Positions 1 to 49,078 of a DNA stretch of 49,078 bases are shown piece after piece. The notes below the pieces were generated by a model that was given only the letters and a program-made list of their open reading frames with translations, did no database searches and had not been told where the DNA came from. Made by a program: the position numbers and the translations under genes. The stretch comes from Octopus bimaculoides (Eukaryota), in NCBI RefSeq assembly GCF_001194135.2, contig NC_068981.1, positions 19,032,839-19,081,916 on the forward strand, given 5' to 3'. How positions within the stretch are numbered: the stretch's first letter is position 1; each line of letters begins with the position of its first letter.

Positions 1-23
1 TATATATATATATATCTGCATCA

Positions 24-298
24 ACAGCTAGCAAGCCAAGCTACTCCACATTGATAAGGAGCAATGACCCTGAAACTAGTCTCTGGATGTTGGCTTTGCT
101 GGGTGGAGGTGCTTATCGCCCCTGTTTGAAAACTTAAAGACACAGAACGCTTGTATCACATAGCCAACTGGAAACGATGTTTCCTGGGGCTAAATAATAG
201 CAGCCTTCATCCCTTTCTTCAAATTGCCACATTAAGTTGGCAACAAACCAACTCTTTATCGTGCTGCTACTGTATAAATCTCTCTCAGAAATTTAGAA
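24..298 (+). repeat. Hammerhead-containing direct repeat, copy 1 (Penelope pLTR/retrozyme-like unit)
   Basis: 24-262 aligns colinearly with 5100-5332 (~80% by eye; shared blocks such as GCTTTGCTGGGTGGAGG, TGGAAACGATGTTTCCTGGGGCT, TGCCACATTAAGTTGGCAACAAACCA). 125-298 also aligns with 47732-47905. Starts a few bases after a (TA)n tract. Confidence 0.9.
45..87 (+). ncRNA. Minimal type I hammerhead ribozyme, decayed copy 1
   Basis: Stem I TCCACA(45-50)/TCTGGA(82-87); core TTGATAA(51-57, degenerate CUGAUGA); stem II GGAG/CCCT with loop CAATGA; GAAA(72-75); palindromic stem III ACTAGT; UC cleavage site at 80-81. Distal stem I extension AAGCCAA(33-39)/TTGGCTT(90-96). Confidence 0.75.
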
Positions 299-434
299 AT
301 GCAATATTTTTTATTTTGTAGATCACTGAATTTATTTGACTTCAAATTCCATAAATTTTCAAAGGCGAATAAGCATCGACAACTAACAAGCTTCTTTTTT
401 TGTTGGTTTTTGAATAAATCTAGCCGATTTTTTT

Positions 435-1806
435 GTGCGCAGCCACCATTGTTGGGTGGTAGTGAAACAATTGAGAAAAATGAGAAGTTGTGCAGAAGCT
501 ACTGGAGGTCGAGTTCCCCTGGGCCCAAGCGTGCTGAAACAGGAGATGTTACAGTGGAATGGAGAGCTGATAGAGAAATATAGTAGTTTGGTAGAGAAGG
601 AAGGGTCAAATATAAAATTGACCCTACCAGGGGAGGAAAGGGCGAAGGTGGAAAAGAGGACGGTCATATTCAGAACATTTTCAAATATAAACAGAAGAAT
701 TGAACACGCGCCGCAGGAAGAAATAGAAGAAATTTTGGAAATACATATAGGAGACAGTATAGCGTTCTTTACAAGAGGAAAGAGATATGCGTCTGTAGTG
801 GTAGCCTTTGTAACGGAAGAGGAGGCGGAAGAAGCCTCCAGCAGGATGATACAGGGAGAGAAATGGACATTGATGCCAAACTGTTTGGATAAACGAATTG
901 TCAGAATGAGTGTAGGAAAAATCATCCCACCGTTGATGGATCCAGAGTGAATAATAGAGGCGATTTTTTAATTCGGAGATGGGGCAGGAAAGCGAAGGCA
1001 TGATAAGCCGAACCCAACAAGTGAAGTGGTGGGGCTACGGATTTGCGATAATTTGTGCAGTGAGCCCGAAATATTACAGCGAAATGCCTGAAATTTTGGA
1101 GCTATCAAATGAGGAAAAGCTGGAGATAATGTTGGAGAGGAGACCCCAAAAGTGTTACCAATGTGGTGAAAGAGGGCACTTGAGAAAGAAATGCCCTAGA
1201 GCAGCAGTGGAAATTGTAGAGGAGAATATTCAGGAGAATGTAATAGTGGAAACAGATAACAGAACAAGACGGGAATCTTGCGGAGGTGAAAGCAAGGAAA
1301 AGAGAGAGGAGAAAGTCACCAACGATAGAGGAACTGAAGAAGTAAAAAGCAATGGAAGAGGAAATCCAACCTAAGACGAGAAACGGGCAAGATTTACCAG
1401 TAGGATTTACCAGTAAAGGACTTACAAGTACAAAAACATTCAGACCCACAGACACTCAAACACACAGACATACAAACGCACAGAAATATAGACAAACAGA
1501 TACAAGATATCTTAGAATCACAGAAACCTAAAAACAAAGACACACAGACAAAACACGGAGAATTACAGTCAAACAAACACACCGATACAATCACAGGAAA
1601 GCCAAGAATTACAGAAATACAGAGACAAAAAACACAAACATGCAAGACACAAATAGAAGTAAGGTTTTTAATGAAATATAGGACACCCAAAAGTTAAAAG
1701 AATTTCAAAACTGAAAGACATTATGAAAGAGTGAATCCACTGGGGCTGGAGGTGGATGTTGAACCTTGGGCCTCGGTGGTGAATTACGTGGACGAAAAGG
1801 AGATGA
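435..1806 (+). pseudogene. ORF1 (gag-like nucleic-acid-binding protein) of the L1/Tx1 element, frameshifted
   Basis: ORF pieces 435-950 and 979-1374; CYQCGERGHLRKKC zinc knuckle at 1153-1194; then a Lys/Gln/Thr-rich low-complexity tail. The 3' end is approximate. Confidence 0.75.
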
Positions 1807-1850
1807 AGTGGTAAGTCGTGATTTATACTCTTGAAAATTTACCAGATAGG

Positions 1851-2806
1851 NNNNNNNNNNNNNNNNNNNNNNNNNNNNNNNNNNNNNNNNNNNNNNNNNN
1901 NNNNNNNNNNNNNNNNNNNNNNNNNNNNNNNNNNNNNNNNNNNNNNNNNNNNNNNNNNNNNNNNNNNNNNNNNNNNNNNNNNNNNNNNNNNNNNNNNNNN
2001 NNNNNNNNNNNNNNNNNNNNNNNNNNNNNNNNNNNNNNNNNNNNNNNNNNNNNNNNNNNNNNNNNNNNNNNNNNNNNNNNNNNNNNNNNNNNNNNNNNNN
2101 NNNNNNNNNNNNNNNNNNNNNNNNNNNNNNNNNNNNNNNNNNNNNNNNNNNNNNNNNNNNNNNNNNNNNNNNNNNNNNNNNNNNNNNNNNNNNNNNNNNN
2201 NNNNNNNNNNNNNNNNNNNNNNNNNNNNNNNNNNNNNNNNNNNNNNNNNNNNNNNNNNNNNNNNNNNNNNNNNNNNNNNNNNNNNNNNNNNNNNNNNNNN
2301 NNNNNNNNNNNNNNNNNNNNNNNNNNNNNNNNNNNNNNNNNNNNNNNNNNNNNNNNNNNNNNNNNNNNNNNNNNNNNNNNNNNNNNNNNNNNNNNNNNNN
2401 NNNNNNNNNNNNNNNNNNNNNNNNNNNNNNNNNNNNNNNNNNNNNNNNNNNNNNNNNNNNNNNNNNNNNNNNNNNNNNNNNNNNNNNNNNNNNNNNNNNN
2501 NNNNNNNNNNNNNNNNNNNNNNNNNNNNNNNNNNNNNNNNNNNNNNNNNNNNNNNNNNNNNNNNNNNNNNNNNNNNNNNNNNNNNNNNNNNNNNNNNNNN
2601 NNNNNNNNNNNNNNNNNNNNNNNNNNNNNNNNNNNNNNNNNNNNNNNNNNNNNNNNNNNNNNNNNNNNNNNNNNNNNNNNNNNNNNNNNNNNNNNNNNNN
2701 NNNNNNNNNNNNNNNNNNNNNNNNNNNNNNNNNNNNNNNNNNNNNNNNNNNNNNNNNNNNNNNNNNNNNNNNNNNNNNNNNNNNNNNNNNNNNNNNNNNN
2801 NNNNNN
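1851..2806. other. Assembly gap inside the L1/Tx1 element (other gaps: 5351-5811, 7162-7580, 14190-14560, 25343-25878, 29283-29292, 33091-33730, 34185-34632, 36949-37350, 47944-48052)
   Basis: Runs of N. Confidence 1.
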
Positions 2807-4905
2807 GGAGGTTAAAAAGGCGTTGGCCGAGGGCACCGGGGAAAAGTCGCCGGGGCTGGATGGTCTACCCTATGAGTTTATCGTAGCATGCCGGACTTGT
2901 TCGGGGACCTGCTGGCCAGCTTCTACACAAACTGGTAACAGAATGGGAGGATTCCCAGTTCTGTGAGCCGGGGAGTGGTGACGCTGATCCAGAAGGACCC
3001 GAGCAAGGGGGATATTATAAGTAATTGCAGGCCCACAACTCTACTCAATGTAGAGTTAAAGATTTTGGCCAAGGTGTTAGCTAAAAGGTTGACGCGTGTT
3101 GTGGAAAAACTTGTAGGGAAGGCGCAGACATGCGCCATCCCAGGCAGGTCGATCCAGGACAATCTTCACCTTATTCACGACACCTTAGACAGGCTGGGTA
3201 AATTAACCGGCAAAGGTGGGGTACTGGTCCATTTAGATCGAAGTAAAGCGTTTGATAGGGTAGAACACCAGTACGTGGCGGCGGTCCTGGAAGCGGCCGG
3301 GCTGGGCCCTGACTTCCGTGGTTGGATCTCCGCCATGTACAGCGGCATCAAATCCACAGTCCAGATAAACGGCTACCTGTCGGAGCCGTTTCCGATGAAG
3401 CGTTCAGTTCGTCAAGGGTGTCCCCTGTCTCCGCTTCTATGCGTGTTGGCTCTTGAGTCATTACTGCAGAAGTTGGAGAATTTGGGGGACGCCCCCAATG
3501 AAATCGATTGCAGTAAGTCAGTCTCTGCTTACGCGGGTGACATCACCATCATCGTGTCCAATGAGGCTCAGCTACCTCGTGTAGAGGAGACTATCAGAGG
3601 ATACGAGGCAGTGGAAGGGGCAAAAGTTAACAAGGACAAGTCCATCGGCTTGCGTCTCGGCACCTGGAGGAGCAAGTCGATATCGTCCAGTGTCGTGGGT
3701 CACTGGACATATGGTCCTGTTAAGATGCTTGGAGTTTGGTTTGTATCGGACTCTCAAACGGAGAAGAATTGGAGCGAGGTGGCAGACAAGGTGGAGGTCC
3801 TAGTACGGACTTGGTACGGGAGGGCTCTGTCCTTGAAAGGAAGGGCGGAGGTGGTACAGGTGCTTATTGCATCTGTCATCACCTACCGCCTGACCGTTGT
3901 CCTTTTCCCCGATTCGTGGCTTAACAAGTTGGAGCGCTTCCTTTTCCGCTTGTTGTGCAAGGGAGGAAAGCAACTTGTGAGGCGCTCCGTTTGCTGTCAG
4001 GAATCGTTAAAGGGTGGGTTAGGGATGCCCTGGCTAATGATGCGCAGACATGCGTTGAAGCTAAGGCATCTCTGGTGCCACCTGGAGGGTGATAATGTGT
4101 GGAATCCGCTGGCAAAGGAATTCTTCCGTGACCAGCCACCTTAGAGCGTTTTAAACCCAGTTTCATTAAAAGACGGAATCTAACTGAATGGCAAAAGAAG
4201 TGTCGACAGGCACTCGTGCTGATCCACAAGACGGGCAAGGTCAGCAGTGGGAATACCACCTCGGTTTTGTATAGAGGGCTGGTAAAGTATAAAAATGATG
4301 ACACCCTAGGAGGGGCTCTGGGGTTCGATGAGAACAAACTTACCAGCCTGTTCAAAAAAACTTTCGGGTTAGGGTATTTGGATAGAAACCAAAAATCCCT
4401 GACCTGGCAGTGCTACAGGAACGCTTTACCTGTTCGAGATAAGTTATCCAGGCACGGAATGTCGGTGCCAACGACATGTCCAAGACGTGGGCTGGACGAC
4501 GAAACCGTCCAGCACGTCTTTGTACATTGTCGGGAACTGTCAGGCTTGATAATTTACGTCAAACACGTGTTGTCGCATCTGGGAAGAGTTCAGCTTTCGG
4601 CTGAATCTATAATAAAGATTGTACCGCTAACTGGACTCTCGAAGGAAAGTGAGGCATGTTTTTAATGTACAGTTGCTGTGCTGAAAGAATGTATACGGAA
4701 GATTATGATGCAAGGATTCGTAACGGGGTCCTTCATCTCTGGCCCTGGTGTGCTACGATACTTCAGATACCATCTGAAGAGCAAGATAGGGCTGGAGAGA
4801 AGGACCCTGTCGAGAAGTGTGTTTAAGGAAAGATGGAAACCTGTGTTAAGAAAGGTGGGTACAAGGGACCCTGCTAAATCGGCATTGGAAAAAAGGAGAA
4901 ACTAA
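2807..4905 (+). pseudogene. ORF2 reverse transcriptase and C-terminal domain of the L1/Tx1 element
   Basis: KSPGLDGLPYEF, NCRPTTLLNVELKILAKVLAKRL, IPGRSIQDN, LDRSKAFDRVEH, VRQGCPLSPLL, YAGD (3530-3541, mutated YADD), KGGLGMP, CPRRGLDDETVQHVFVHC. One frameshift near 2880-2960; stops at 4142 and 4663. Confidence 0.92.
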
Positions 4906-5099
4906 AAGGAAGGAAATAGTCGTTGGGCCTTTGAGGCAACAGGGCATATCCCTTACTCATAAGAAAAAGACTATTTATGTTACAATATCATCAATATTTT
5001 TAAATAATAGGTATTCAAACACATCATCACATTTTTCTGCATGTGTTGTACTGTGCTGTCCCATCCATGTGTTGACCATTATGGTTGTAATAGAAAATT

Positions 5100-5332
5100 C
5101 AGCTAACAAACCAAGCTACTCCTGACTGATGAAGAACAATGACTCTGAAAGTAGTCTCTGGACGCCAGCTTTGCTGGGTGGAGGCGCTTATCGCCCGTTT
5201 GAAAACGTAAGGACGCAGGACGCTTGTGTTACATAGCCAATTGGAAACGATGTTTCCTGGGGCTGAATAACAGTAGCATTCTTCCCTTTCCTGGGACTGC
5301 CACATTAAGTTGGCAACAAACCATCACTTTAT
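5100..5332 (+). repeat. Hammerhead-containing direct repeat, copy 2
   Basis: Colinear with 24-262; cut at its 3' end by (TA)n and then an N-gap. Confidence 0.9.
5120..5162 (+). ncRNA. Minimal type I hammerhead ribozyme, decayed copy 2
   Basis: Stem I TCCTGA(5120-5125)/TCTGGA(5157-5162); intact CTGATGA(5126-5132); stem II AGAA/CTCT with loop CAATGA; GAAA(5147-5150); GTAG (C>G relative to the palindrome); UC at 5155-5156. Confidence 0.8.
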
Positions 5333-5811
5333 ATATATATATATATATATNNNNNNNNNNNNNNNNNNNNNNNNNNNNNNNNNNNNNNNNNNNNNNNNNN
5401 NNNNNNNNNNNNNNNNNNNNNNNNNNNNNNNNNNNNNNNNNNNNNNNNNNNNNNNNNNNNNNNNNNNNNNNNNNNNNNNNNNNNNNNNNNNNNNNNNNNN
5501 NNNNNNNNNNNNNNNNNNNNNNNNNNNNNNNNNNNNNNNNNNNNNNNNNNNNNNNNNNNNNNNNNNNNNNNNNNNNNNNNNNNNNNNNNNNNNNNNNNNN
5601 NNNNNNNNNNNNNNNNNNNNNNNNNNNNNNNNNNNNNNNNNNNNNNNNNNNNNNNNNNNNNNNNNNNNNNNNNNNNNNNNNNNNNNNNNNNNNNNNNNNN
5701 NNNNNNNNNNNNNNNNNNNNNNNNNNNNNNNNNNNNNNNNNNNNNNNNNNNNNNNNNNNNNNNNNNNNNNNNNNNNNNNNNNNNNNNNNNNNNNNNNNNN
5801 NNNNNNNNNNN

Positions 5812-5866
5812 TCTATCGGTCTCTTTTGCCGAACTGCTATCTTACGGGGACGCAAACACACCACCA
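5812..5866 (-). mobile_element. SINE internal fragment (same family as 10899-11195)
   Basis: CTATCGGTCTCTTTTGCCGAACTGCTATCTTACGGGGACGCAAACACACC matches 11005-11055; truncated by the N-gap. Confidence 0.7.
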
Positions 5867-5867
5867 T

Positions 5868-5960
5868 ATATATGTATGTATGTATGTATGCATGTATGTA
5901 TGTATGTATGTATGTATGTATGTATGTATGCATGTATGTATGTATGTATGTATGTATGTA
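5868..5960. repeat. (TATG)n microsatellite
   Basis: Direct reading. Confidence 0.95.
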
Positions 5961-6279
5961 TTCTTACTGCCTGCTTTTTCTTTCTTTCTGCCACTTTGCT
6001 TATGATGCGTTTATACATATATATTCATATATGTAAATACATATACACAATGTACACGCATATTTTGTATGTGTATGTAAATACTTTTCCCTCCCTTACT
6101 CTCGCAAACTCTCTCCTTGCTTTCTCCTTCTCTCCTTCCTCTGCCTTTGTCTCGCCCCCCCCCCCGCCATCACCTATATTCAGTAATTGCGAGAAATCAT
6201 TTCTTCGTTTTTAATTTTTAATCAATCTTAATTTAGTTCCATTTTATATCGCTTGTGTTGTTATTATTGTTAATGATGT

Positions 6280-7780
6280 GTTGATAGTGGCAACAGTGGT
6301 ATTAGCAGCAGCAGCAGCAGCGGAGGTGGTGGCGGCGGCGGCGTCTGTGGTGGTGTTGGTGGTGTTGGTGGTTGCGGTTTTTTGGTGGTAGTAGTGTTAA
6401 TGGTGGTGGTGGTGATGATGATGATGATGATGATGATGAGGATGATGATGATGGAGGTGGTGGTGGTGGTGGTGTTAGTAGTAAAAATACTGATCATGGT
6501 GGTGGCGGCGGTGCTAACAGAAGCAACAGTTGTACTAATCCTGGGAACTCCAGCAGTAGTAGTAGTAATAGCGATTTGTGTGGTGGTGGGTATGGTGAGA
6601 ATGGCAGCAATGGTTTGCGGTGGTTATAATAGTTTTAGTAATAGTAGTAGTTGTGGTAATAATGGTGGTAGTAGTAGTAGTAGTAGCAGTAGTCATAGTA
6701 GGGGTGAGTTGGTGGTGGTTATAGTAATTGTAATGGCATTGATAGTAGTGGAGGAGGTGGTGGTGGTGGTGGTGGTGGTGGTGGCAGCGGTGGTACTTTT
6801 GCTTAGTTGTTGTTGTTGCTGGTGATAGTACTAATTGTTGCTGTTGTTGTTGTTGTTGTTGTTGTGGTGGTGGTGGTGGAGATCGTGGTCGTAGTTATTA
6901 TGAAGTTGTTTCTTTTCTTTCGTTGTTATAATAATAATGGTAACAACAACAATAAATGCAATAATAATAATAATAATAATAATGATAATAACAAGAGAAG
7001 CAACAATGACATCAACAGCAACAACAACAACATGAATACCACCACCAACACCACCACTAGCAACACTAATACCACTACCACCAGCACCACCACCACCACC
7101 AACAACAACAACAACCACAACAATAGCAATAACATGAACACTACCACCAACACCACCACCANNNNNNNNNNNNNNNNNNNNNNNNNNNNNNNNNNNNNNN
7201 NNNNNNNNNNNNNNNNNNNNNNNNNNNNNNNNNNNNNNNNNNNNNNNNNNNNNNNNNNNNNNNNNNNNNNNNNNNNNNNNNNNNNNNNNNNNNNNNNNNN
7301 NNNNNNNNNNNNNNNNNNNNNNNNNNNNNNNNNNNNNNNNNNNNNNNNNNNNNNNNNNNNNNNNNNNNNNNNNNNNNNNNNNNNNNNNNNNNNNNNNNNN
7401 NNNNNNNNNNNNNNNNNNNNNNNNNNNNNNNNNNNNNNNNNNNNNNNNNNNNNNNNNNNNNNNNNNNNNNNNNNNNNNNNNNNNNNNNNNNNNNNNNNNN
7501 NNNNNNNNNNNNNNNNNNNNNNNNNNNNNNNNNNNNNNNNNNNNNNNNNNNNNNNNNNNNNNNNNNNNNNNNNNNNNNNNACAACAACAACAACAACAAC
7601 AAGTAATACAATAATCATATATCATATATCGACAACAGCAGCGGCAACCACAGCACCAATAACAGCAATAAAAACAATTACAACCACAACACAAACAACA
7701 ATAATAGTAAGAACAACAACAGCAACTACACCGACAATAACATCGATCACAGCAACAACAACAACAACAACAACAACAAT
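6280..7780. repeat. Compound trinucleotide low-complexity region (GGT/GAT/AGT/GTT, then AAC/ACC/AAT)
   Basis: Direct reading; source of the poly-V, poly-T and poly-N ORFs in the track. Confidence 0.95.
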
Positions 7781-8392
7781 CTGTCTTCGCCTTCCCCTTT
7801 CTCTATTGTAATTCAATAAAGTCAGATAAGGGATGAAAATCGAAGAAGATTTAGTGAAGAATGGCGTCGGTGGAGTAAGGCAGAGAGAGAAGGGAGTCTA
7901 TTGAATTATTGGTTACAGGAGAATGTTGTGGTTTTAGTGGTGAACAACTGGAGGGAGGGAGTATTACTGTATACCACTCTTGCGGAGTATCCACCTAAAT
8001 TATAGTGATGGGGCTAACTACTAGCCAGGAGTAATTAGGTGAATATAACCACTGGGTAATTGGGCTAATTTTGTAAGGTGATTATTGTGGATTAGTGCCA
8101 AGTCAGTTCTAATTGAATAGATCTGTGATCAAATTTATTCTATCCATGGCCATCAAGTCAGTTTTCCGCAGGCATGCTGCTTGTGTAGTTAAGAAACTCG
8201 CTTTGCAAAGAAATGGTTTTGAGTTTTGCCCAACTACAAGTATCTTCTACTTTATCCCCGGGATGAACAATGCTTTGTCAGTGAATTTGGTAGATGAAAA
8301 CTGTGTGGAAGCCTGTGATATATGTGTACAAGGTGTTTGAGCTAAATTTGACTGATTGCATAAAAGGAAAATAAAATAATATTTTGTTGTGT

Positions 8393-8551
8393 CAAGAGAG
8401 AGTCATTACGTCAGAATTGATAACACAGACACTGGTTCAATTCCATTCCTTTATTATTACTCAATTGGGTAAATATCCAATTGATTAATAGTAAAGAAGT
8501 GGAATTGAACCAGTGTGTGCTTTATTAGTATTGGCATAATGACTCTCCCTG
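8393..8551. mobile_element. Fold-back (near-palindromic) MITE-like element
   Basis: GAGAGTCATTA/TAATGACTCTC, ACACTGGTTCAATTCCA/TGGAATTGAACCAGTGT and TCAATTGG/CCAATTGA are mutual reverse complements around a short loop near 8470. No clear TSD. Confidence 0.75.
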
Positions 8552-8739
8552 GGTAAAACAAAACTTGTTTCAACACACGAATTCACATAAAGAATCTTGC
8601 ATAAAAATACAAAAACGAAGTAAAACACAATATCCTATCCAAGAATAAAGTATTTAAAACGTCAAAAAATACCGCAAAACATTTTTTCCGACACTTTAAA
8701 AGTTCTACTGATCTGCTGTCCTCAACACCAACATTTCTC

Positions 8740-8922
8740 TCGAAGTACAACCTATCGTCTTAAGCAAGGAAATGTACCCTGTACTCCTAGATATATTACG
8801 ACTGGAAATAGTAACAGATTGGTCGTAGCTGGAAAAGACATTGATCATGGATCAAAGAATGCGATAAAAGCTCAGCTAGGGCACAACAACAACAACAACA
8901 ACAACAGCAACAACAACAACGA
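8740..8922 (+). mobile_element. (CAA)n-tailed retroposon 3' fragment
   Basis: Ends in a (CAA)n tail; TGGTCGTAGCTGGAA...TGATCAT resembles TGGTCGTGGCTGGAA...TGATCAT at about 39667-39692. Confidence 0.4.
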
Positions 8923-9438
8923 TAAGAGTAACAATTAAAACTGTTCTGTATATAAAAACTATAATTAATTATTAATGAAGAAGCTAAACCATGTATTCAT
9001 CACTACAATCTCACCATCACTACCACTGACACTTGAATCCGGTTATAATAAGTTTAGAATACTCCCAAACGCCATTATACGCCAATTACAGTATTTAATA
9101 GCATAAAAGATGCAGGGGCGTAATTGGCGCACCCCAATTTCAGTAGCGCATATCGAGGGGAAAAAAAAACACTTTTTAGTGTATTAAGACTAGGGGTGAT
9201 TTTTTGAGACGTTTTATTGGAAAATCGTGCGTTTTATATGTCATCAAATATAATAGTTTTATTATGTGTGGTTGGTCTTTATTTAATCACTCCTCTGCTG
9301 TATCCCTTGATTTCTTTCATCTCATGAACTCCACCCTTTCCTTTTGCCTTGCTTTAAGCATTTGCTCTGCAAACATTTGTCCTCCCTCTCCACTTTTTAT
9401 CTCCACTTTGTTCACACTCTAGACTCTTAACTCTTGAC

Positions 9439-9724
9439 CAGTGGTTTCCAAACTTTTCCAGGGTGCCGCCCCCTTGGTTCTAAGGCCACATTCCAAGTGC
9501 CCCCCACCCACTCACCATCACAGACTTGGGACCATTTTCTGCAGCAAGTTCAAAACAACAGTATTTCACAAATAAAACTTAACCTAATTAACCCTTAATT
9601 TTGTTTGTTTTTACATCCGTTGCCCCGTTTTTGGTTACCCCATTATCGCCCCCATTTTCTTCAACGCCCCCTGGATCTTTCCACCGCCCCAGAGGGGAGA
9701 TACCGCCCACTTTGGGAACCATTG
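9439..9724. mobile_element. hAT (Charlie-like) MITE, 286 bp
   Basis: TIRs CAGTGGTTTCCAAACT / ACTTTGGGAACCATTG; degenerate 8-bp TSD CTCTTGAC (9431-9438) / TTCTAGAT (9725-9732), fitting the NTCTAGAN target preference. Confidence 0.85.
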
Positions 9725-9899
9725 TTCTAGATTCTTGACACCTAGCTTTCTTACACCCTAGACTCTTAATTCCTTCTGACTTTCTCCCTGTCTCCTAATA
9801 CTACATATTTTATAAATTAAAAATATTGTATGAAAGCTTTTTAATTAAAAATCTTAGATAACTTTTTTTAACATGTGGTGTAATGGTTTCTTTATTTAT

Positions 9900-10630
9900 A
9901 CTTATGCTCTTTACCATCCGCATTTTCTTTCTGTTCCCAATGAAATCTTGCCGGTACATATTGATTAGATATGGTCGGAAGAATGTTAGCTTCTTGTATC
10001 AATATCCAATAATCAAGTCCCTTCGACGTGCTTTTCCATCCTGGAATTTCCGGATCACAGTTGCAAGAGTTTCACCATCAATGTTATATGTCTTGGATGT
10101 AATGCAGGAGCAATAATTTTTTAGGATTTGTTCCAGCCACATAGCATCTTACTTAAATTCCTACTCTTCACTCCAGATTTTCCTCCAGAAGGAGCCTATG
10201 TCTTCTTGTGAAGGAACTTCCGTGATGTTTACTGCTCCTCCTCTCATGTCTCTGTATACTGCTGCCTGTTTGCGGTTAAATCTTTTTGTTTATTGTTCTT
10301 CTCTCGGTTATTCTCTTCTGATGTCGGAGTTTTTCACTGACAGCTTTTAGCTCCTGCTTGAGGGTAATCAGTTTGAAAGTGAATGTCCTCTTCTTGCTGT
10401 CTCCAAGCATCATTTCTATCTCCTTTCTCACTTTCTGTTGGTGGGACGTATAGTGACTTGCTTGTTTGCATGCTATAAGCATCATTACATGACCGTTGGT
10501 CTTCCGTAAACCAGTTATCTTTTTCTCTGTCTTCAAAACCCATGATGGCACTTTCTTTGTTAGTTCGGTTTTGTTTACTTTTTGAATATCATTCGTGTAC
10601 TGTTTTATAGTAGTAACCAGAGCACATAAA
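9900..10630 (-). mobile_element. Dong/R4-type (RLE) LINE fragment, region upstream of and entering the RT
   Basis: Minus-strand translation ...RHQKRITERRTINKK..VYRDMRGG..PSQEDIGSFWRKIW..MWLEQI..KARRRDLIIGY*YKKL matches the R4-like P.EE..FW..IW and KAPG.D.I..FW.K.L patterns. Confidence 0.75.
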
Positions 10631-10664
10631 CAGGCGTTAATCTGCCAGTATGTGGGTTCATCAC

Positions 10665-10757
10665 ACATGTATGTATATATGTATGTATGTATGTATGTAT
10701 GCATGTATTTACCTATCTATCCACACACACACATATATATATATCATATATATGCAT

Positions 10758-10900: not shown

Positions 10901-11195
10901 TCATTGGCTGCGGCCATGCTGGGGAACCGTCTTGAAGAATTTTTAGCCGAATGAAGTGAATCCAGTACTTATTGTTTTCCTTTTCCTCTAAGACTGGTAG
11001 TATTCTATCGGTCTCCTTGCCAAACCGTTAAGTTACGGGAACATAAACACACCAACACCGGTTGTCAAACGGTGGTGGGACACACACACACACACACACA
11101 CGCATACATATACATATACATATATACAACGGGCTTCTTTCAGTTTCCGTCTAACAATTCCACTCACAACGTCTTGGTCGGCCCGAGGATATAGT
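10899..11195 (-). mobile_element. SINE with internal microsatellite, 5'-truncated
   Basis: 11125-11195 is the reverse complement of the 47570-47650 SINE segment (GAAAGAAGCCCGTTGT, GACGGAAAC); 11005-11055 matches 5812-5866. Confidence 0.8.
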
Positions 11196-16254: not shown

Positions 16255-18010
16255 TGAACTTTAGTATGGAAGTGGTCAAAACAGGGTACCACACGCAGTG
16301 GCATATCACATTGTGAACAATGTTATCTAGTTTCTTTACGTTTCCCTTTTGTCTTATATGCTGTGCATCTCTATGAAGCCTTTGTCTGCTTGGCGGTGGA
16401 GAGAAACAGTCGTGGAAAATGTCCATGTCCCTTCACCATGTGATGAGGAGAGAATCCAGCGTGGAGACGTCCACGCGTTCTCTACTTTGGCATGTCTGAT
16501 GCTTGCATCATTTCACGGAACAATAGATTCCTGAATGTGAATCCATCCTCCACACCACCAAGCATCTGCCAAATCAAATGTGAATACACGACATACATGT
16601 CAACTATATACAAGAAAATGTTTGTACCATTTCACAAATTTTCTCACCGATTTGTGTGTCGTCACCAGCTGATCTGAGCAATCAACCCCGCCCATCCCTT
16701 CATTGTATGAAATAACTACACTAGGTTTCATTATGGCATTACCGTCTGCGTCTTGTTTCCTAGTGTCCTTTATGCTTGCAAAATGCATTGTGAGTAACAT
16801 GCAGACATTTTTCTTCTCACGCCACACTAGAACGTGAATGCCACTATCGGTGCATCGGTACGATGCTTTATCTTCTGAAGCTCGGGCAGCATGTTTTTCC
16901 TGTGCGTCCACACAATCCCACAGGTATTAGTCTTCCTCGCCTGCAACTTCAGGAAGAGGTCTGGACTGGAAAACTAGTTGTCCATATAAATATTGTAGCC
17001 TTTGTCAAACAAGTTTTCATTTAGCAACAATACGACATCACTTGACACTACAGTAGACGTTGGAAGATCCAATCTGTCCTGACCAGTGTAGATTTTGTAA
17101 TTCCACGTGTACCCACAGGCTCTGCTGGTTGGCTAGCAAACTTTATACGCCTTGACTCCTAAGCGGACACGTTTGGTTGGGTCGTATCATTTGAATCGAA
17201 CCCTTCCTTGAATTTCCACTAACTATCGTCCATACAAATGTCCTGTGCGGGGACATACAAAATTCTGAAACATTCAGCCATTTCGTCACCGATAGGATGT
17301 ATTTTGGACATCCAGTCATCCTGGTTCTCGCCTGAATTTAAATGTAGAAGAAGCACCAAAAATCGATCACGTGGCATCGTTTTCGGAAAGAAAGGTGCCG
17401 ATTCCAATATGACGCCAGAGTCGGTTTCGTCACGGTGCCCATCAGTATTAGCAGGGCAATCAGAACTTTGAGTTTGTCCCCTGTGGTTGGAAACCAATCA
17501 CCAACAAGCCCAGGTCTGACATGTTGGGGATGGTTTTCAGCATAATCATTCGTTTCGTCCGCTATATATTGGAACATTCCATCCGTCAAAAACTCGCGAA
17601 AGATTTCCAATGGCGAACTTCCATGTTCAGGGTTTGCCTTTATGCCAAGCGTACCAGTAAACCCATGCCGTTAGATGAAATTGTCTCTCACTCGCCACAC
17701 GACATTCTGTTGTCCAGGTCCATTCACTACTGTCTGCCTGTACCGTTGATTCACCGGAATATCATCATCGCTGTCGGTATCATCTGATTCTGAACTAGGA
17801 AAATAATCACTCTCCGAGTCATCGTCCGAACCGGAAGAAACAACTGGTGAGGTGGTGAAGCTTGGTGTAGCTTGGTGCGACGACCACAAATTCGACGAAA
17901 TAGGACGGGACGACGAAGTTGACGGAGCCGGAGCGGTAGGACGCGACGACCGTAAATTCGACGAAACAGGACGTGACGGCGAAGTTGACGGAGCCGGAGC
18001 GGTAGGACCT
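16255..18010 (-). pseudogene. piggyBac (PGBD4-like) transposase, with frameshifts and stops
   Basis: Acidic N-terminus (DDDSESDYFPSSESDD); FQYIADETNDYA; LILMG; MPRDRF; catalytic DDS, YMDN*FSSP and MGGVDCSDQ; C-terminal cysteine-rich domain [35 protein letters not shown]. Confidence 0.92.
17879..18010. repeat. 66-bp tandem duplication (2 units) in the piggyBac 5' coding region
   Basis: Units start at 17879 and 17945; reads as a Ser/Pro-rich 22-aa repeat (RPTAPAPSTS...) on the minus strand. Confidence 0.9.
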
Positions 18011-43199: not shown

Positions 43200-44345
43200 G
43201 CACAATCTTTTCGATTTCTTTGAGACATGGTTCTCCTGGGATATTATCTAAATATTATTGATATCTCTTTCTTTATCATACCTAAAACAACCAAAATAAC
43301 AGGAACAGTTCTTGCTTTAAGATGCCACATCTTTTGTATTTCAATTTCCAGGTGCTTATATTTACTTAATTTGTCAAATTCCTTTACAAATCTATCTTTA
43401 TCAGTGGAAACATTTACATCTATTAGTCTACGAGTACTTTCTTCCCTGTCTTTATTGACTATGTCTGCTCGATTATCCTGGATCGTTCTGTCGGTGTTGG
43501 CCGGAAAATCCCAGAGGATAGTGACATTTTTACCTTCACCGACTGGCTCAGGATGATGTTCATACGAGTAAGCAGGCATACTGATTTTGTAGTGTTTACA
43601 TATTTTCCAACGTAGATACTGTACTACCCTATCGTGAAAGTTTTTGTATTCGTTTGGTGTCAGCACAGGACACCCCGAGACGAAATGGTCTATTGTTTCG
43701 TCAGTCAAATGTGTCGCAGAATCTGCATTTAGGGTCAGAACCGTTTTGAAGAACGTTAGCCTGGTAAGTTTTGGTAAGAAAACTTTGATCTTGTGACGCT
43801 AATATGAAACCTTCAGTCTCTGTTTTCAGTCCTCGATTTCTCAGTCACTGATAGGTTGTTGTTTGGCCTACCTCAGCATTTTGACTTCGAAGTATATACT
43901 GTTCATGTAGAGGCTTCTTGCTCCACTGTTCCTCAATTTGTTTCTGCCTGTTCTTTTTTGCAGTCTGCTTGATCCGTTTTGCCTTGTTTTGTGGCAGTGG
44001 TTTCAGGTTCTTCATCTAATTCAGGGTTAATACCAAGTTACCTTGCAAATTTGCAAGCTTCCTTGACAATAGAATGTGACTTTTACTGCTTTCGTGTTTG
44101 CACACAAGCCGCAGCATCCAGTCCTCTGTACTAGATAAGTACCTGTTCATTGGTATTGTAGAGGTCTTCTAGCACAATTCTACCAGCATTATTCCTCTTC
44201 CTCCTTTACTTCTAGGTAGGTACAGATGATCAACGTCTGCTTTTGGGTGGTGCATGTTCTTAGATGTTAGTATTTTTCATGTTCTTAGCTGTTAGTGGTT
44301 TTCTTGTCTTCCCGTCCAGTCCTTTCATGAACTTAGTACAATTTA
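43200..44345 (-). mobile_element. Dong/R4-type LINE 3' portion with CCHC and RLE endonuclease
   Basis: HHPKADVDHLYLPRSKGGRG; GLKTETEGF; KCRFC...ETIDHFVSGC; ILWDFP..TDRTIQDNRADIV...IDV...KEFDKLSKYKHLEIEI. Confidence 0.9.
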
Positions 44346-45900
44346 CTAATATAATCTGGAAGGATGGTGCAATACCTAAGGACTGGAAGGATGCAATTAT
44401 TCTTTCTCTTTATAACGGGAAGAGAGCCAGAGCAGAGTATGGCAACTACAGAGGTATTGATCTACTATCAGCTGCTAGCCAGGTTCTGGCAAGTATTCTT
44501 CTTACCCACATGAATAGGTGTCTTGTAAATGATATCCTATCTGAATCTCAATGCGGTTTCCGATCTGGAAGAGGAACGCTGGATATGATTTTCACATCAA
44601 GACAGATATAGAAGAAGTGCTATGAGCAGAATATGGAACTTGTCCGGGTATTCATTTATTTAACTTTGATACTGTGGATACGGCCTCCCTATGGAATATG
44701 CTTGGCAAAGTTAGATATCCGGATCACTTTGTATCAATAATCAAACCATTTCTTGATAGGATGGAGGCTTGAGCCAATGATGGTACTGGCATGTCGGGAC
44801 CCATTCCTGTAGAGAATGGTGTCAAGCAGGTGTCATCCTTGCCCCAACACTCTTTTCTCTGTACTTTTGCTGCTACTCTTATTCATGTTTTTGCTGTGGA
44901 CAGCTCTCCTGGGATATATGTTAGCTATCGATCTTCTGTGTCGATTTGCTTCCAATTCAAAAATTTTCCAGTCTCTTATGCGTGACCTCCTTTATGCAGA
45001 TGATTGTGACTTAGTCACTCATACAGCGGATGATATGCAAATACTTGTGAATCATATTTCTGCTTCTTTTAAAGTATTTGGACTCAGCATTATCCTGGAC
45101 AAGACTGTATCAGGAAACCCGTATGTGGAACCTGCTATCTTGGCTGAAGGAACACTTCTGAAAGTGATAGACAAGTTTGTCTACCTGGGAAGCACACTCA
45201 GCCGTTCTTTCTCCCTGGATGATGCAATATATTTCAGGCTGCAGAGAGCTACTGATTTCTTCAGGTCTCTTGAATCTCGTATCTGGTCTTAACATGGTAT
45301 CACAAGTGAGCAAAAATTGCTGTGTACCGTGAATATGTATTGACATCGATCTTTTACTCAAGTGAGACATGGACCCTTTACAAACGTCATGTAAAGGTAC
45401 CAGAACGCTTCCATCAGAAATGTCTGAGACACATTCTGAATGTTGGCTGGACCTTAAAACTCCTGATAAACAGATCTTGAGGAAAGCCAATATCCTGAGT
45501 ATTGAGGCGATGATGAACAAACACCGGTTACGTTGGACTGGACACTTTATTAGAATGAATGATAGCAGAATCCCTACATAGATACTATATGGGAAACTTG
45601 TTAGGGAAAAGCAACCCCGGCAAAAGCCAAGACCGTGATTTAAGGACTGTTTAAAGTACACATTAAAGGCCTGTGAAATGCGGGAGGCTGACTAGGAGAG
45701 CAATGCTTGTCATCACTAGGGAAGAAGGGAGTCGATAGCTTTGAAAGAGCACGTATTCTTCATGAAGAATTTAAGCGTGCTGCTCGAAAACGCACTACTA
45801 GTGTAATGAATGGGGAAAGCCTGGTCTGCAATGTTTGCAGTCGTGTATATTTGTTCGTTAGCCACCATCGGAGCCGCGAGTGTAAAGTATAAGGTGGTCA
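44346..45900 (+). mobile_element. RTE-clade (BovB-like) LINE, 5'-truncated and decayed
   Basis: IPKDWKDAIILSLY, GNYRGIDLLS, ESQCGFRSGRGTLDMIF, NGVKQ, LLYADDCDL, FVYLGSTLS, LRWTGHFIRMNDSRIP, terminal CNVCSR; followed by a microsatellite tail. Confidence 0.92.
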
Positions 45901-47483: not shown

Positions 47484-47486
47484 GGT

Positions 47487-47655
47487 GCAGGCGTGGCTGT
47501 GTGGTAAGGAGCTGGCTTCCCAAATACATAGTTCCGCGTTCAGTCCCACTGCGTGGCACTTTGGGCAGGTGTCTTCTACTATAGCCTCGGGTCGACAAAA
47601 GCCCAGTGGGTGGATTGGGTAGATGGAAACTCGAAGAAGCCCGTTGTGTATATGT
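47487..47655 (+). mobile_element. tRNA-derived SINE, 5' half
   Basis: GCAGGCGTGGCTGTGTGGTAAG A-box region and GCGTTCAGTCCC B-box-like; body homologous to 11125-11195 (minus). Confidence 0.85.
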
Positions 47656-47731: not shown

Positions 47732-47905
47732 TTTGAAACTTAAGGACACAGGAAATGTGTCAAGGCCGACAGGAAACGGTCCAGCTTCCTAGGGCTAAAT
47801 AGCAGTAGTATGATTCCTTTATTGGGACTGTCACATTAAGTTGACAGTATACAACTGCTTTATCGTAACACTACTGCTTAAGTCTCTCTGTGAGATTTAT
47901 AATTA
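47732..47905 (+). repeat. Third, 5'-truncated member of the hammerhead-repeat family (lacks the ribozyme)
   Basis: TTTGAAACTTAAGGACACAG...TTCCTAGGGCTAAATA...GGGACTGTCACATTAAGTTG...CTTTATCGT...TCTCTCT aligns with 125-298 and 5198-5332. Confidence 0.75.
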
Positions 47906-49078
47906 GACCATTTCTAATTTATATATATATATATACATATATANNNNNNNNNNNNNNNNNNNNNNNNNNNNNNNNNNNNNNNNNNNNNNNNNNNNNNNNN
48001 NNNNNNNNNNNNNNNNNNNNNNNNNNNNNNNNNNNNNNNNNNNNNNNNNNNNTATATATATATATATATATACATATATATACATACACACGCACACACA
48101 TATATATATATATACATATATACATACATGCATACATATATATGTGTGTGTGTGTGTGTGAGTATGTGTCTGTGTATGCATGTGAGTGAGTGTCTATCCA
48201 TTTAAAAAAATTTATTTGTATTGCGTCTTTTGCAGTCTCCATATTTTTGAACATTTTTGTTTTTGTTTTTGTTCTTTTTTTTCCCGAAGCACATTATTTT
48301 CCCTTCGTAACCCCAAATGACAGTTTCGTATTACTGTATCTCTTCAAGCCCTTGCAAATGATCATAGAAATACGTCCATTGATACTGACCTCAATATCTC
48401 GGGCCCTTGTGTCCAATAAAAAGAAATCATTTTGTATAGATGTTGTCGTTCTTGTTGTTGTTCTAATCGCATAGTTGATGGATAACGTCCTCATGGTAAC
48501 TATTATCGTGATAATGTTAATGAAATAGAGGACTAAGATACTGATGAAGGAAAGGAAGAACGTCACGACGACGACGACGACGTCAAATAGGACGAAGGCG
48601 ACAGCAATGACATCGACGACGACGACGACGATGATTGTGCTGTAGTGGTGATGGTGGTGGAGTTGTTGATGATGATAATGCTGATAATGATGGTAATGAT
48701 GATGATGAGCGTTATATTACATACATCATAATTCTGAAATAAGTTCGAGGTTTCTCGATTGGAGTGACATTTCTATAGACACCCACGGATGACTCAAGCT
48801 GTCTATATTGTAAGTGCCACGGTTCGAGAATAGACATTATTATAGGCCAACAGATTAATCATTACATAGCAACAACAACAACTGCCATCGTTACACTATG
48901 TGTGTTGCTTGTGAGAGTGGGTGTCTTTCTGACGATATTTTAGGGAAACAATTTCTATACAGATGATTCATCGCAAGTCTCAGCGATTTAGCGTTGGCAT
49001 TTCGCTGATTAATTAAAAACTGCAATATTTTTATGCATAGCATTACATGCACACGTGCACGCACACACACACACACAC

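What the first reader, a model, noticed from the sequence alone, without database searches (positions are those of the whole stretch)
17..5332. L1/Tx1 retrotransposon enclosed by hammerhead-ribozyme direct repeats: possible chimeric ribozyme-LTR element
Seen: two ~235-bp direct repeats (24-262, 5100-5332; ~80% identical by eye), each with a hammerhead at the same position. They sit about 130-200 bp outside a near full-length L1/Tx1 body, with (TA)n beyond both ends. Established: hammerhead-bearing direct terminal repeats characterise Penelope-like elements (pLTRs) and retrozymes. L1/Tx1 elements normally have no terminal repeats, and the ribozymes I know from LINEs are HDV-like. Inference, three models: (a) an L1/Tx1 family that acquired ribozyme termini, so read-through transcripts self-cleave at 81 and 5156 into a ~5.1-kb unit that could circularise; (b) a Penelope/retrozyme unit whose RT-GIY-YIG body was replaced by L1 cargo and is mobilised in trans; (c) a Tx1 that inserted, possibly site-specifically, between two units of a retrozyme or pLTR array. 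The repeat divergence is compatible with identity at insertion given the ORF decay, but this was not computed.
Basis: partly seen in the sequence, partly recalled or inferred. Interest (0 to 1): 0.9.

Follow-up and report, generated by a model that had tools for sequence, protein, structure and literature searches.

The report
Decayed L1 inside hammerhead-repeat array
A broken L1-type jumping gene in an octopus-like genome most likely landed inside a short tandem pair of small ribozyme-carrying repeats, which is ordinary nesting of mobile elements and probably not a new hybrid element.

Summary
The direct repeats are real: 25-259 and 5100-5332 are 85% identical, and (TA)n lies outside both. 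A third, 5'-truncated copy at 47732-47917 also ends in (TA)n, so the repeat is a dispersed family.

About 0.04 such hits are expected per window. Each copy has one mismatch in helix I and one in helix II. No Rfam hammerhead model matches at any threshold.

The body is L1-clade: CCHC ORF1, an RT closest to human L1 ORF2p, and zf-RVT. It has at least seven disabling lesions. Its endonuclease region is hidden in the 1851-2806 gap, which looks about 450 nt too short.

The closest available relatives have conventional ends: a 17-bp TSD directly at the L1 ends, or an (ATT)n tail. The best TSD candidate here (302-315 / 4992-5005) brackets only the L1. Removing the L1 leaves 1.6 tandem units of about 385 nt in (TA)n, which looks like a retrozyme or Penelope-derived repeat.

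The chimeric "ribozyme-LTR L1" is unsupported but not excluded. No other copies of the repeat or of this L1 family were reachable.

The parts
1..15 (.). (TA)n microsatellite, left flank of the whole structure
   Evidence: Read directly. The window starts inside it.
16..24 (+). 9 nt (CTGCATCAA) between (TA)n and unit 1, with no counterpart upstream of unit 2
   Evidence: Alignment A1.
25..311 (+). Unit 1 of the hammerhead-bearing repeat. 25-259 is duplicated as unit 2; 260 to about 311-328 is shared only with copy 3.
   Evidence: nhmmer with the unit profile covers 25-312.
45..87 (+). Hammerhead-like motif 1: helix I 5/6 bp, core UUGAUAA (U3-A8 variant), helix II 3/4 bp, GAAA, palindromic ACUAGU, C17 at 81
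   Evidence: Descriptor scan. The U3-A8 covariant is described in PMC4209133. No Rfam match.
224..243 (+). Conserved hairpin TTGCCA-cattaagt-TGGCAA, also at 5297-5316 and 47828-47847
   Evidence: Pattern found 3 times against 0.02 expected. Two pairs changed on both sides in copy 3.
302..315 (+). Candidate 5' copy of the L1 target-site duplication (CAATATTTTTTATT)
   Evidence: Best match between the two junction regions: exact 10-mer, 12/14. P=0.09 by shuffling.
312..479 (+). Putative L1 5' UTR (inferred)
   Evidence: Lies between the TSD candidate and the first ATG of ORF1. 32% GC. The relative L001 has a 5' UTR of about 237 nt.
480..1371 (+). L1 ORF1 in two frames (480-947, stop at 948; 979-1371), with a CCHC knuckle at about 1147-1197
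   Evidence: Weak homology to L001 ORF1.
1851..2806 (.). Assembly gap. It must hold the whole endonuclease and linker of ORF2, and is probably about 450 nt too short.
   Evidence: No APE or linker hit anywhere in the window. CCHC-to-RT spacing is 1608 nt here against 2063 nt in L001.
2808..4905 (+). ORF2 remnant: RT about 3011-3736 (YAGD in place of YADD), zf-RVT about 4390-4536. Frameshifts at about 2880 and about 4145; premature stops at 2936, 4142 and 4663.
4906..4991 (+). Putative L1 3' UTR and degenerate A/T-rich tail (inferred)
   Evidence: Weak match of 4915-4970 to the clade's terminal motif (P=0.03). Followed by the TSD candidate.
4992..5005 (+). Candidate 3' copy of the L1 TSD (CAATATTTTTAAAT)
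   Evidence: The AT-rich target resembles L001's TSD TATTTTTAAAATTTGTA.
5002..5099 (+). Inferred remainder of repeat monomer 1, the spacer before unit 2
   Evidence: Inference from the empty-site reconstruction (period 385 nt). No independent copy is available.
5100..5332 (+). Unit 2 of the repeat, ending at CTTTA|(TA)n
5120..5162 (+). Hammerhead-like motif 2: helix I 5/6, core CUGAUGA, helix II 3/4, GAAA, loop 3 GUAG (palindrome lost), C17 at 5156
   Evidence: No Rfam match.
5333..5350 (.). (TA)n right flank, followed by a 461-N gap
47732..47917 (+). Third, 5'-truncated copy of the unit (unit positions about 100-300). It lacks the hammerhead part and ends in AATTTA|(TA)n.
   Evidence: blastn 72%, nhmmer E=1e-53, alignment A1.

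Best explanation
Two unrelated retroelements are nested.

First, a short non-coding repeat carrying an animal type-I hammerhead was copied into a (TA)n microsatellite as about 1.6 head-to-tail units. It is a retrozyme-like or Penelope-derived non-autonomous element. The inferred period is about 385 nt. The array starts at 25 and ends at unit position about 235, where CUUUA meets (TA)n.

Later, an L1-clade LINE inserted by ordinary target-primed reverse transcription into an AT-rich site (ATATTTTTAAAT) in the part of unit 1 that lies downstream of the duplicated segment. This made a TSD of about 10-14 bp. That pushed the two hammerhead-bearing segments 5.07 kb apart, so they now look like terminal repeats of the L1. 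Everything then decayed: about 8% per copy in the repeats and at least 7 disabling lesions in the L1.

Shown: the repeats, their (TA)n context, the third independent copy, the L1 identity of the body, and the conventional ends of L1 relatives.

Inferred: the L1 boundaries and TSD, the 385-nt period, mobilisation of the unit by a Penelope-like element, and past ribozyme activity.
For: 1. The unit is an independent dispersed family. A third, 5'-truncated copy sits 42 kb away, also abuts (TA)n, and is collinear with unit 1 for about 50-70 nt beyond the point where unit 2 stops. The sequence after 259 therefore belongs to the repeat and not to the L1.
2. Both array ends and copy 3 end at TTTA|TATA junctions in (TA)n. 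(TA)n is a documented preferred target of Penelope-like elements (PMC8557442).
3. The hammerhead has the canonical animal architecture used by retrozymes: 6-bp helix I, 4-bp helix II, 1-bp helix III with a palindromic loop (PMC4209133, PMC7229834).
4. The body is L1-type and not a Penelope RT/GIY-YIG.
5. Relatives of this L1 have their own ends. L001 is bounded by a 17-bp AT-rich TSD directly at the L1 ends. L002 ends in a conserved motif plus (ATT)n. A truncated relative in this same window ends in the same motif.
6. The single best TSD candidate brackets only the L1, and its target resembles that of L001.
7. The predicted cleavage sites coincide with no structural junction.
8. The model needs no coincidence. 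The left edge of homology is simply where the array starts, and the right edge is where it ends.
Against: - The TSD candidate is not significant on its own (P=0.09).
- The L1 3' end could not be fixed by homology. Only a weak P=0.03 match exists.
- The 98 nt at 5002-5099, assigned to the repeat monomer, have no second copy to confirm the assignment.
- The reconstructed monomer is not unusually structured (z about -0.9), whereas retrozyme RNAs are described as highly self-paired.
- No Rfam hammerhead model matches.
- No Penelope-like element was found in the window.
- L1 decay is compatible with the two units having been identical when the L1 arrived. A co-insertion or an L1-made duplication is therefore not excluded.
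- The two units lie on different contigs joined by a gap.
Confidence: 0.6

Rival explanations
1. Family-level chimera. The unit-L1-unit structure is itself the transposing entity: an L1/Tx1 lineage that acquired hammerhead-bearing terminal repeats, or a retrozyme or Penelope shell carrying L1 cargo. Transcripts are cut at 81 and 5156, possibly circularised, and copied as a whole into (TA)n.
For: The whole structure is bounded by (TA)n on both sides with no microsatellite at the inner junctions. The repeats are in direct orientation at the same register. Repeat divergence is compatible with identity at insertion. This L1 lacks a clear copy of the terminal motif conserved in its relatives. A relative (L001) shows that this clade can integrate composite cDNAs inside one TSD.
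Against: The cleavage sites are 57 nt inside the units and match no junction. Both ribozyme copies are defective, and the hammerhead region is no better conserved than the rest (8/43 differences against 34/233). Unit 1 is longer than unit 2 by sequence that belongs to the independent unit family. Relatives have ordinary L1 ends. A TSD candidate brackets the L1 alone. No second example could be found.
Confidence: 0.1
2. The duplication was made by the L1 insertion itself. [quoted passage not shown] The other is end-to-end template jumps (unit RNA to L1 RNA to unit RNA) within one integration event.
For: Either version gives two units that were identical or near-identical at insertion, which one search does not reject. 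Long TSDs are known for some non-LTR elements (R9, cited in PMC8557442). L001 carries two diverged 3' UTRs (77% identical) inside one intact 17-bp TSD, as expected from template jumping in this clade.
Against: A long TSD requires the left copy to abut the L1 5' end. Yet unit 1 continues for 50-70 nt of unit-family sequence that unit 2 lacks, so an extra deletion must be assumed. The apparent abutment of the L1 3' end to unit 2 was a MAFFT artefact with no statistical support. The C3-G8 / U3-A8 difference between the units is easier to explain if they came from different functional templates.
Confidence: 0.12
3. Two independent insertions of the unit into the same (TA)n tract, with the L1 landing between them by chance.
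For: (TA)n is evidently a hotspot for this family: three of three unit 3' ends abut it. Octopod-type SINE tails seed many TA/TG microsatellites in the window.
Against: No (TA)n remnant lies at either inner junction. Unit 1 and unit 2 are much closer to each other (85%) than to copy 3 (72%).
Confidence: 0.08
4. Scaffolding artefact. The contig carrying unit 1 and ORF1 (1-1850) and the contig carrying ORF2 and unit 2 (2807-5350) come from different loci and were joined through repeat-derived mate pairs.
For: The gap hides the whole endonuclease and linker, and its stated length is about 450 nt short of what a relative needs. Nothing in frame can be followed across it. Ten gaps, many next to (TA)n, show a fragmented assembly.
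Against: Order, orientation and approximate spacing of ORF1 and ORF2 are right for one element. The L1 family appears to be low-copy: no close relatives in 5.8 billion proteins and no other fragments in the window.
Confidence: 0.07

Closest known systems
Animal non-LTR retrozymes (Cervera & de la Pena 2020, PMC7229834) and their proposed origin from Penelope-like element pLTRs (bioRxiv 10.64898/2026.07.22.740005)
   Same: Short non-coding repeat with GC below 50%. Carries a type-I hammerhead with 6-bp helix I, 4-bp helix II and a 1-bp helix III capped by a palindromic loop. Head-to-tail arrangement with an inferred period of 385 nt, inside the reported 170-400 nt range. 5'-truncated solo copies occur. 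Associated with a microsatellite that Penelope-like elements favour.
   Different: Only 1.6 units, and these are interrupted by an L1. Both ribozymes are mutated. The RNA is not predicted to be unusually self-paired. No expression or circle data. Not recognised by Rfam hammerhead models.
Penelope-like elements with hammerhead-bearing pLTRs (Cervera & de la Pena 2014, PMC4209133; Craig et al. 2021, PMC8557442)
   Same: Direct repeats, each with a hammerhead, flanking an RT-coding body. (TA)n target. One repeat longer than the other. U3-A8 core covariant as described for Cercyon PLE hammerheads.
   Different: The body is an L1-clade LINE (CCHC ORF1, L1-type RT, zf-RVT). It is not a TERT-like RT fused to a GIY-YIG endonuclease.
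Xenopus Tx1 composite elements, where the Tx1L LINE is inserted at a specific site in the ~400-bp PTR-1 tandem repeats of the Tx1D DNA transposon (Garrett, Knutzon & Carroll 1989; recalled from my own knowledge, not checked here)
   Same: An L1/Tx1-clade LINE ends up flanked on both sides by direct copies of a repeat of about 400 bp, because it landed inside a tandem array.
   Different: Site specificity is not shown here, since there is only one example. The host repeat is a ribozyme-bearing retroelement and not part of a DNA transposon.
L1 relatives from cephalopods retrieved here (Argonauta hians locus L001; metagenome contig L002; truncated copy at window 48200-48429)
   Same: 58-61% identical RT with the same domain order. 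Insertion into AT-rich sequence next to TA/TTTA microsatellites.
   Different: The relatives end in the conserved motif GGCCCTTGTGGCYAATAAAGAAATC, followed by (ATT)n or directly by a 17-bp TSD. They have no hammerhead-bearing flanking repeats. In the window's element that motif is at best degenerate.

Membership tests
Hammerhead ribozyme, type I (animal canonical form) | Catalytic core C3-U-G-A-N-G8-A ... G12-A-A ... A15.1-U16.1-H17 | tested here: met
   Unit 2 has CUGAUGA...GAAA...U-C. Unit 1 has UUGAUAA, the U3-A8 covariant reported as a natural variant (PMC4209133), plus GAAA...U-C.
Hammerhead ribozyme, type I (animal canonical form) | Helices I (about 6 bp) and II (about 4 bp) fully paired; short helix III with a palindromic loop for dimer formation | tested here: inconclusive
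   Helix I is 5/6 and helix II 3/4 in each copy, with mismatches at different positions. A perfect ancestor is therefore possible. Loop 3 is palindromic (ACUAGU) in unit 1 only.
Hammerhead ribozyme, type I (animal canonical form) | Match to a curated covariance model (Rfam hammerhead families) | tested here: not met
   No hammerhead hit at gathering score, nor at E<=10 on 300-400-nt or 76-nt slices.
Hammerhead ribozyme, type I (animal canonical form) | Self-cleavage activity | not testable with these tools
   Needs in vitro transcription of monomer and dimer constructs.
Animal non-LTR retrozyme | Head-to-tail repeats of about 170-400 nt, each with one type-I hammerhead | tested here: inconclusive
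   Two hammerhead-bearing units in direct orientation. The period is 385 nt only if the L1 (312-5001) is removed at the candidate TSD. No uninterrupted array was seen.
Animal non-LTR retrozyme | Non-coding, GC below 50% | tested here: met
   GC is 0.39-0.47. Of the ORFs of at least 100 aa, none begins inside a unit except three that run on into the N gap after 5350 (5224..6036, 5229..5933 and 5310..6005); nothing suggests a gene.
Animal non-LTR retrozyme | Highly self-paired RNA expressed as a circle | tested here: inconclusive
   Folding z-scores of -0.7, -1.3 and -0.9 are not significant. These are decayed copies. Expression and circularity are not testable here.
Penelope-like element | Single ORF with a TERT-like RT fused to a GIY-YIG endonuclease between the pLTRs | tested here: not met
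   The body has two ORFs: ORF1 with zf-CCHC, and ORF2 with RVT_1 plus zf-RVT. The RT is closest to human L1 ORF2p. No GIY-YIG was found in the window ORFs scanned.
Penelope-like element | Hammerhead-bearing flanking repeats and a microsatellite, (TA)n, insertion bias | tested here: met
   The bias is documented in PMC8557442. This shows PLE-like behaviour of the unit and does not make the composite a PLE.
L1/Tx1-clade LINE | ORF1 with RNA-binding and CCHC parts; ORF2 with an L1-type RT and a C-terminal Cys-rich domain | tested here: met
   L1 versus Tx1 was not resolved.
L1/Tx1-clade LINE | APE-type endonuclease at the ORF2 N-terminus | not testable with these tools
   The whole region falls in the 1851-2806 gap. 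No APE or linker hit anywhere in the window.
L1/Tx1-clade LINE | TSD directly flanking the LINE body | tested here: inconclusive
   The best candidate is 302-315 / 4992-5005 (12/14, with an exact 10-mer). P=0.09.

The most novel reading that the evidence does not exclude
An L1/Tx1 lineage in an octopod has captured hammerhead-bearing repeats of Penelope or retrozyme origin as functional terminal repeats. The unit-L1-unit RNA is processed, or circularised, and copied as a whole into (TA)n. That would make an autonomous LINE with ribozyme 'LTRs'.
Probability: 0.1. Interest if true: 0.8.

Novelty: new member of a known kind. Interest (0 to 1): 0.25.

Why it matters
If the favoured reading holds, this is routine transposon nesting. 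Its value is modest. It documents a hammerhead-bearing, (TA)n-associated short repeat family in an octopod-like genome that Rfam models miss. It also shows how a LINE landing inside a tandem repeat can mimic an LTR-like architecture, which is a useful caution for automated TE classification. Only if the same composite recurs genome-wide would it matter more. It would then be the first LINE using hammerhead termini, and it would link the L1 and Penelope/retrozyme life cycles.

Tried and rejected
1. Rfam at every permitted sensitivity gave no hammerhead. Only meaningless C/D-box-like hits appeared, driven by UGAUGA...CUGA.

2. Searches for more unit copies found only chance matches to the pattern itself. 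I scanned viral contigs, JGI metagenomes (checked) and GTDB genomes. The family-level test could therefore not be run.

3. The protein search with the RT gave a best hit of only 58-61% identity (Argonauta, and a metagenome contig). No same-family L1 copies were available.

4. A MAFFT alignment suggested that the L1's conserved terminal motif sits at 5066-5098, directly abutting unit 2. That would have favoured a giant TSD or template jump. I rejected it: nhmmer with the relatives' motif does not find it, and local alignments of the 3' UTR are no better than shuffles.

5. Comparing repeat divergence with L1 decay does not discriminate.

6. RNA folding of unit 1, unit 2 and the reconstructed 385-nt monomer as a circle showed no significant stability.

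7. I compared the L1 5' UTR with the Argonauta relative by eye to fix the 5' end and saw no similarity.

8. I looked for a Penelope-like ORF in the window and found none. Only a piggyBac-like fragment and other decayed LINE fragments turned up.

Full report
**Source and assembly.** The window is AT-rich (37.6% GC) eukaryotic DNA with ten N gaps, many next to (TA)n. The best protein match of its reverse transcriptase is from the octopod Argonauta hians. This is therefore cephalopod, probably octopod, sequence.

**The gap, tested first.**
- The region of interest sits on two contigs, 1-1850 and 2807-5350. Unit 1 with ORF1 is on one; ORF2 with unit 2 is on the other.
- Left of the gap there is no recognisable ORF2 sequence.
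- tblastn with the endonuclease of a relative, and with the whole N-terminal half of the Argonauta ORF2, finds nothing in the window.
- In the Argonauta element (L001) the distance from the ORF1 zinc knuckle to the RT N-terminus is about 2063 nt. Here it is 1608 nt including the 956 Ns.
- The gap must therefore contain the entire endonuclease and linker. Either it is underestimated by about 450 nt or the element carries a deletion.
- Continuity and reading frame across the gap cannot be established. Order, orientation and rough spacing fit a single element.

**The repeats.**
- 25-259 and 5100-5332 are 84.7% identical (E=8e-64). That is 199/233 identical, 25 transitions, 9 transversions, one 2-nt indel, K2P 0.166.
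- (TA)n lies immediately outside both, at 1-15 and 5333-5350. Nine unrelated bases lie between (TA)n and unit 1.
- A third copy at 47732-47917 is 72% identical and 5'-truncated, covering unit positions about 100-300 and lacking the hammerhead part. It also runs into (TA)n.
- Copy 3 is collinear with unit 1 for another 50-70 nt beyond the point where unit 2 gives way to (TA)n. The unit is therefore at least about 290-300 nt long. Unit 2 is the shorter copy, and the bases after 259 belong to the repeat family and not to the L1.
- Both unit 2 and copy 3 end at TTTA|TATA.
- A hairpin (224-243, TTGCCA/TGGCAA) is kept in all three copies, with two pairs changed on both sides in copy 3.
- No further copies exist in the window.

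**The hammerhead.**
- Rfam reports no hammerhead at gathering score or at E<=10, even on 76-nt slices.
It comprises a 6-bp helix I, the core, a 4-bp helix II with a 6-nt loop, GAAA, a 1-bp helix III with a 4-nt loop, U-C, and the return strand of helix I.
- A descriptor allowing one mismatch per helix finds only 45-87 and 5120-5162 in the whole window. About 0.043 hits are expected per window-sized random sequence. The descriptor was written after seeing the motif.
- Each copy has one mismatch in helix I and one in helix II, at different positions. A fully paired ancestor is therefore plausible.
- Unit 1 keeps the palindromic ACUAGU needed for the dimeric helix III. Unit 2 has lost it.
- Unit 1's core UUGAUAA is the U3-A8 covariant of the C3-G8 pair that Cervera & de la Pena describe in Penelope-associated hammerheads (PMC4209133). 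One search counts it as a change on both sides.
- After allowing for the 12 pairs I could have noticed, this double change is only mildly unlikely under neutral decay: about 0.05-0.08 by my own arithmetic.
- The hammerhead segment is no better conserved than the rest (8/43 against 34/233 differences).
- I conclude that these are decayed copies of a genuine hammerhead-bearing repeat, and that neither copy is likely to be active now.

**The body.**
- ORF1 (480-947, then 979-1371 in another frame) has a CCHC knuckle.
- ORF2 (2808-4905) has RVT_1 and zf-RVT.
- The RT matches human L1 ORF2p at E=5e-33, against 1e-15 for R2.
- It is an L1-clade LINE and not a Penelope-like RT/GIY-YIG element. L1 versus Tx1 was not resolved.
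- Visible lesions are frameshifts at about 950-979, about 2880 and about 4145, premature stops at 948, 2936, 4142 and 4663, and YAGD in place of YADD.

**What relatives look like.**
- The Argonauta element (L001) is bounded by an intact 17-bp AT-rich TSD, TATTTTTAAAATTTGTA, directly at the L1 ends.
- L002 ends in GGCCCTTGTGGCCAATAAAAGAAATC followed by (ATT)n.
- A truncated relative inside this very window ends in the same motif at 48400-48429.
- None of them carries unit-like repeats or hammerhead motifs.
- These relatives are only 58-61% identical, so they are not the same family. They do show that the clade uses ordinary LINE termini.

**Where the L1 ends.**
- A MAFFT alignment suggested that the terminal motif abuts unit 2. 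nhmmer and shuffling controls gave this no support, and I dropped it.
- A gapped alignment places a degenerate terminal motif at 4915-4970 (P=0.03).
- The best match between the two junction regions is CAATATTTTT(TATT/AAAT) at 302-315 and 4992-5005. It is an exact 10-mer and 12/14 overall, with P=0.09 by shuffling.
- Its sequence resembles the AT-rich target of L001.
- Taken together this is suggestive, not proof, that the L1 occupies about 312-4991 and made its own short TSD.

**Synthesis.**
- Removing 312-5001 leaves unit 1 (25-311), 98 nt (5002-5099) and unit 2 (5100-5332). That is 1.6 head-to-tail units with a period of 385 nt, sitting in (TA)n.
- This is the anatomy of animal non-LTR retrozymes, which are 170-400-nt tandem units with type-I hammerheads (PMC7229834). 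They are now argued to derive from Penelope pLTRs (bioRxiv 10.64898/2026.07.22.740005).
- (TA)n is a documented Penelope-like target (PMC8557442).
- The model needs no coincidences. Homology starts where the array starts and ends where it ends. Unit 1 is longer because the array continues through it. The hammerhead cleavage sites match no junction because the ribozyme played no part in building this locus.
The classical Tx1L-in-PTR-1 composites of Xenopus are a precedent, recalled from my own knowledge.

**What remains open.**
- Repeat divergence (K2P 0.166) predicts about 5.2 premature stops in the visible ORF2 if the L1 is as old as the duplication. Three are seen (P=0.22). An L1-generated duplication or a co-mobilised composite is therefore not excluded.
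- The reconstructed monomer is not unusually structured.
- No other copies of the unit or of this L1 family could be retrieved from any collection.

**Probabilities.**
- Nesting into a pre-existing array: about 0.6.
- Two independent unit insertions: 0.08.
- L1-made duplication or template jumps: 0.12.
- Family-level chimera: 0.1.
- Scaffolding error: 0.07.

**Verdict.** The exciting interpretation is not supported. Novelty is limited to a new member of known kinds.

Noticed in passing
L001 (Argonauta hians) 4866-10668: The related L1 carries two tandem 3' UTR copies (10014-10290 and 10421-10651) that are only about 77% identical, inside a single intact 17-bp TSD (TATTTTTAAAATTTGTA). This is as if two different RNAs were copied in one integration event by template jumping.
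   Followed up: partly
window 48200-48429: A 5'-truncated 3' end of a different L1 relative. It terminates in CGGGCCCTTGTGTCCAATAAAAAGAAATC, 94% identical over 32 nt to the terminus of metagenome contig L002. This looks like a strongly conserved 3'-terminal motif across cephalopod L1 families.
   Followed up: partly
window 47485-47645 (partial second copy at 11128-11195, minus strand): A tRNA-like SINE head by eye (GGCGTGGCTGTGTGGTAAG...GTTCAGTCCCACTGCGTGGCAC), followed by TG/TA microsatellite. ARAGORN calls no tRNA. Such SINE tails may seed the many (TA)n/(TG)n tracts that the hammerhead unit family uses as targets.
   Followed up: partly
window 1417-1640: A CA-rich stretch of degenerate 8-nt periodicity (ACACAGAC-like) between ORF1 and the gap. 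It corresponds in position to the low-complexity C-terminal part of ORF1 in the Argonauta relative.
   Followed up: no
window 16600-16908 (minus strand): An ORF fragment matching the piggyBac-type transposase domain DDE_Tnp_1_7 (E=5e-10).
   Followed up: no
window 43244-45660: Decayed fragments of at least one other LINE. There is an RT remnant with YADD (44264-45292, plus strand; weak RVT_1) and a LINE-like C-terminal ORF on the minus strand (43244-43708). Neither is Penelope-like.
   Followed up: no
window 6280-7160: About 900 bp of GGT/GAT/AGT-type trinucleotide-rich sequence, followed by its AAC/ACC-rich reverse-complement-like counterpart, running into a gap. This may be a large imperfect inverted low-complexity block.
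   Followed up: no
window 5105-5156: With permissive settings, Rfam reports only weak C/D-box snoRNA-like hits (E 1-6). They are driven by UGAUGA...CUGA inside the hammerhead-like motif and are chance-level.
   Followed up: yes
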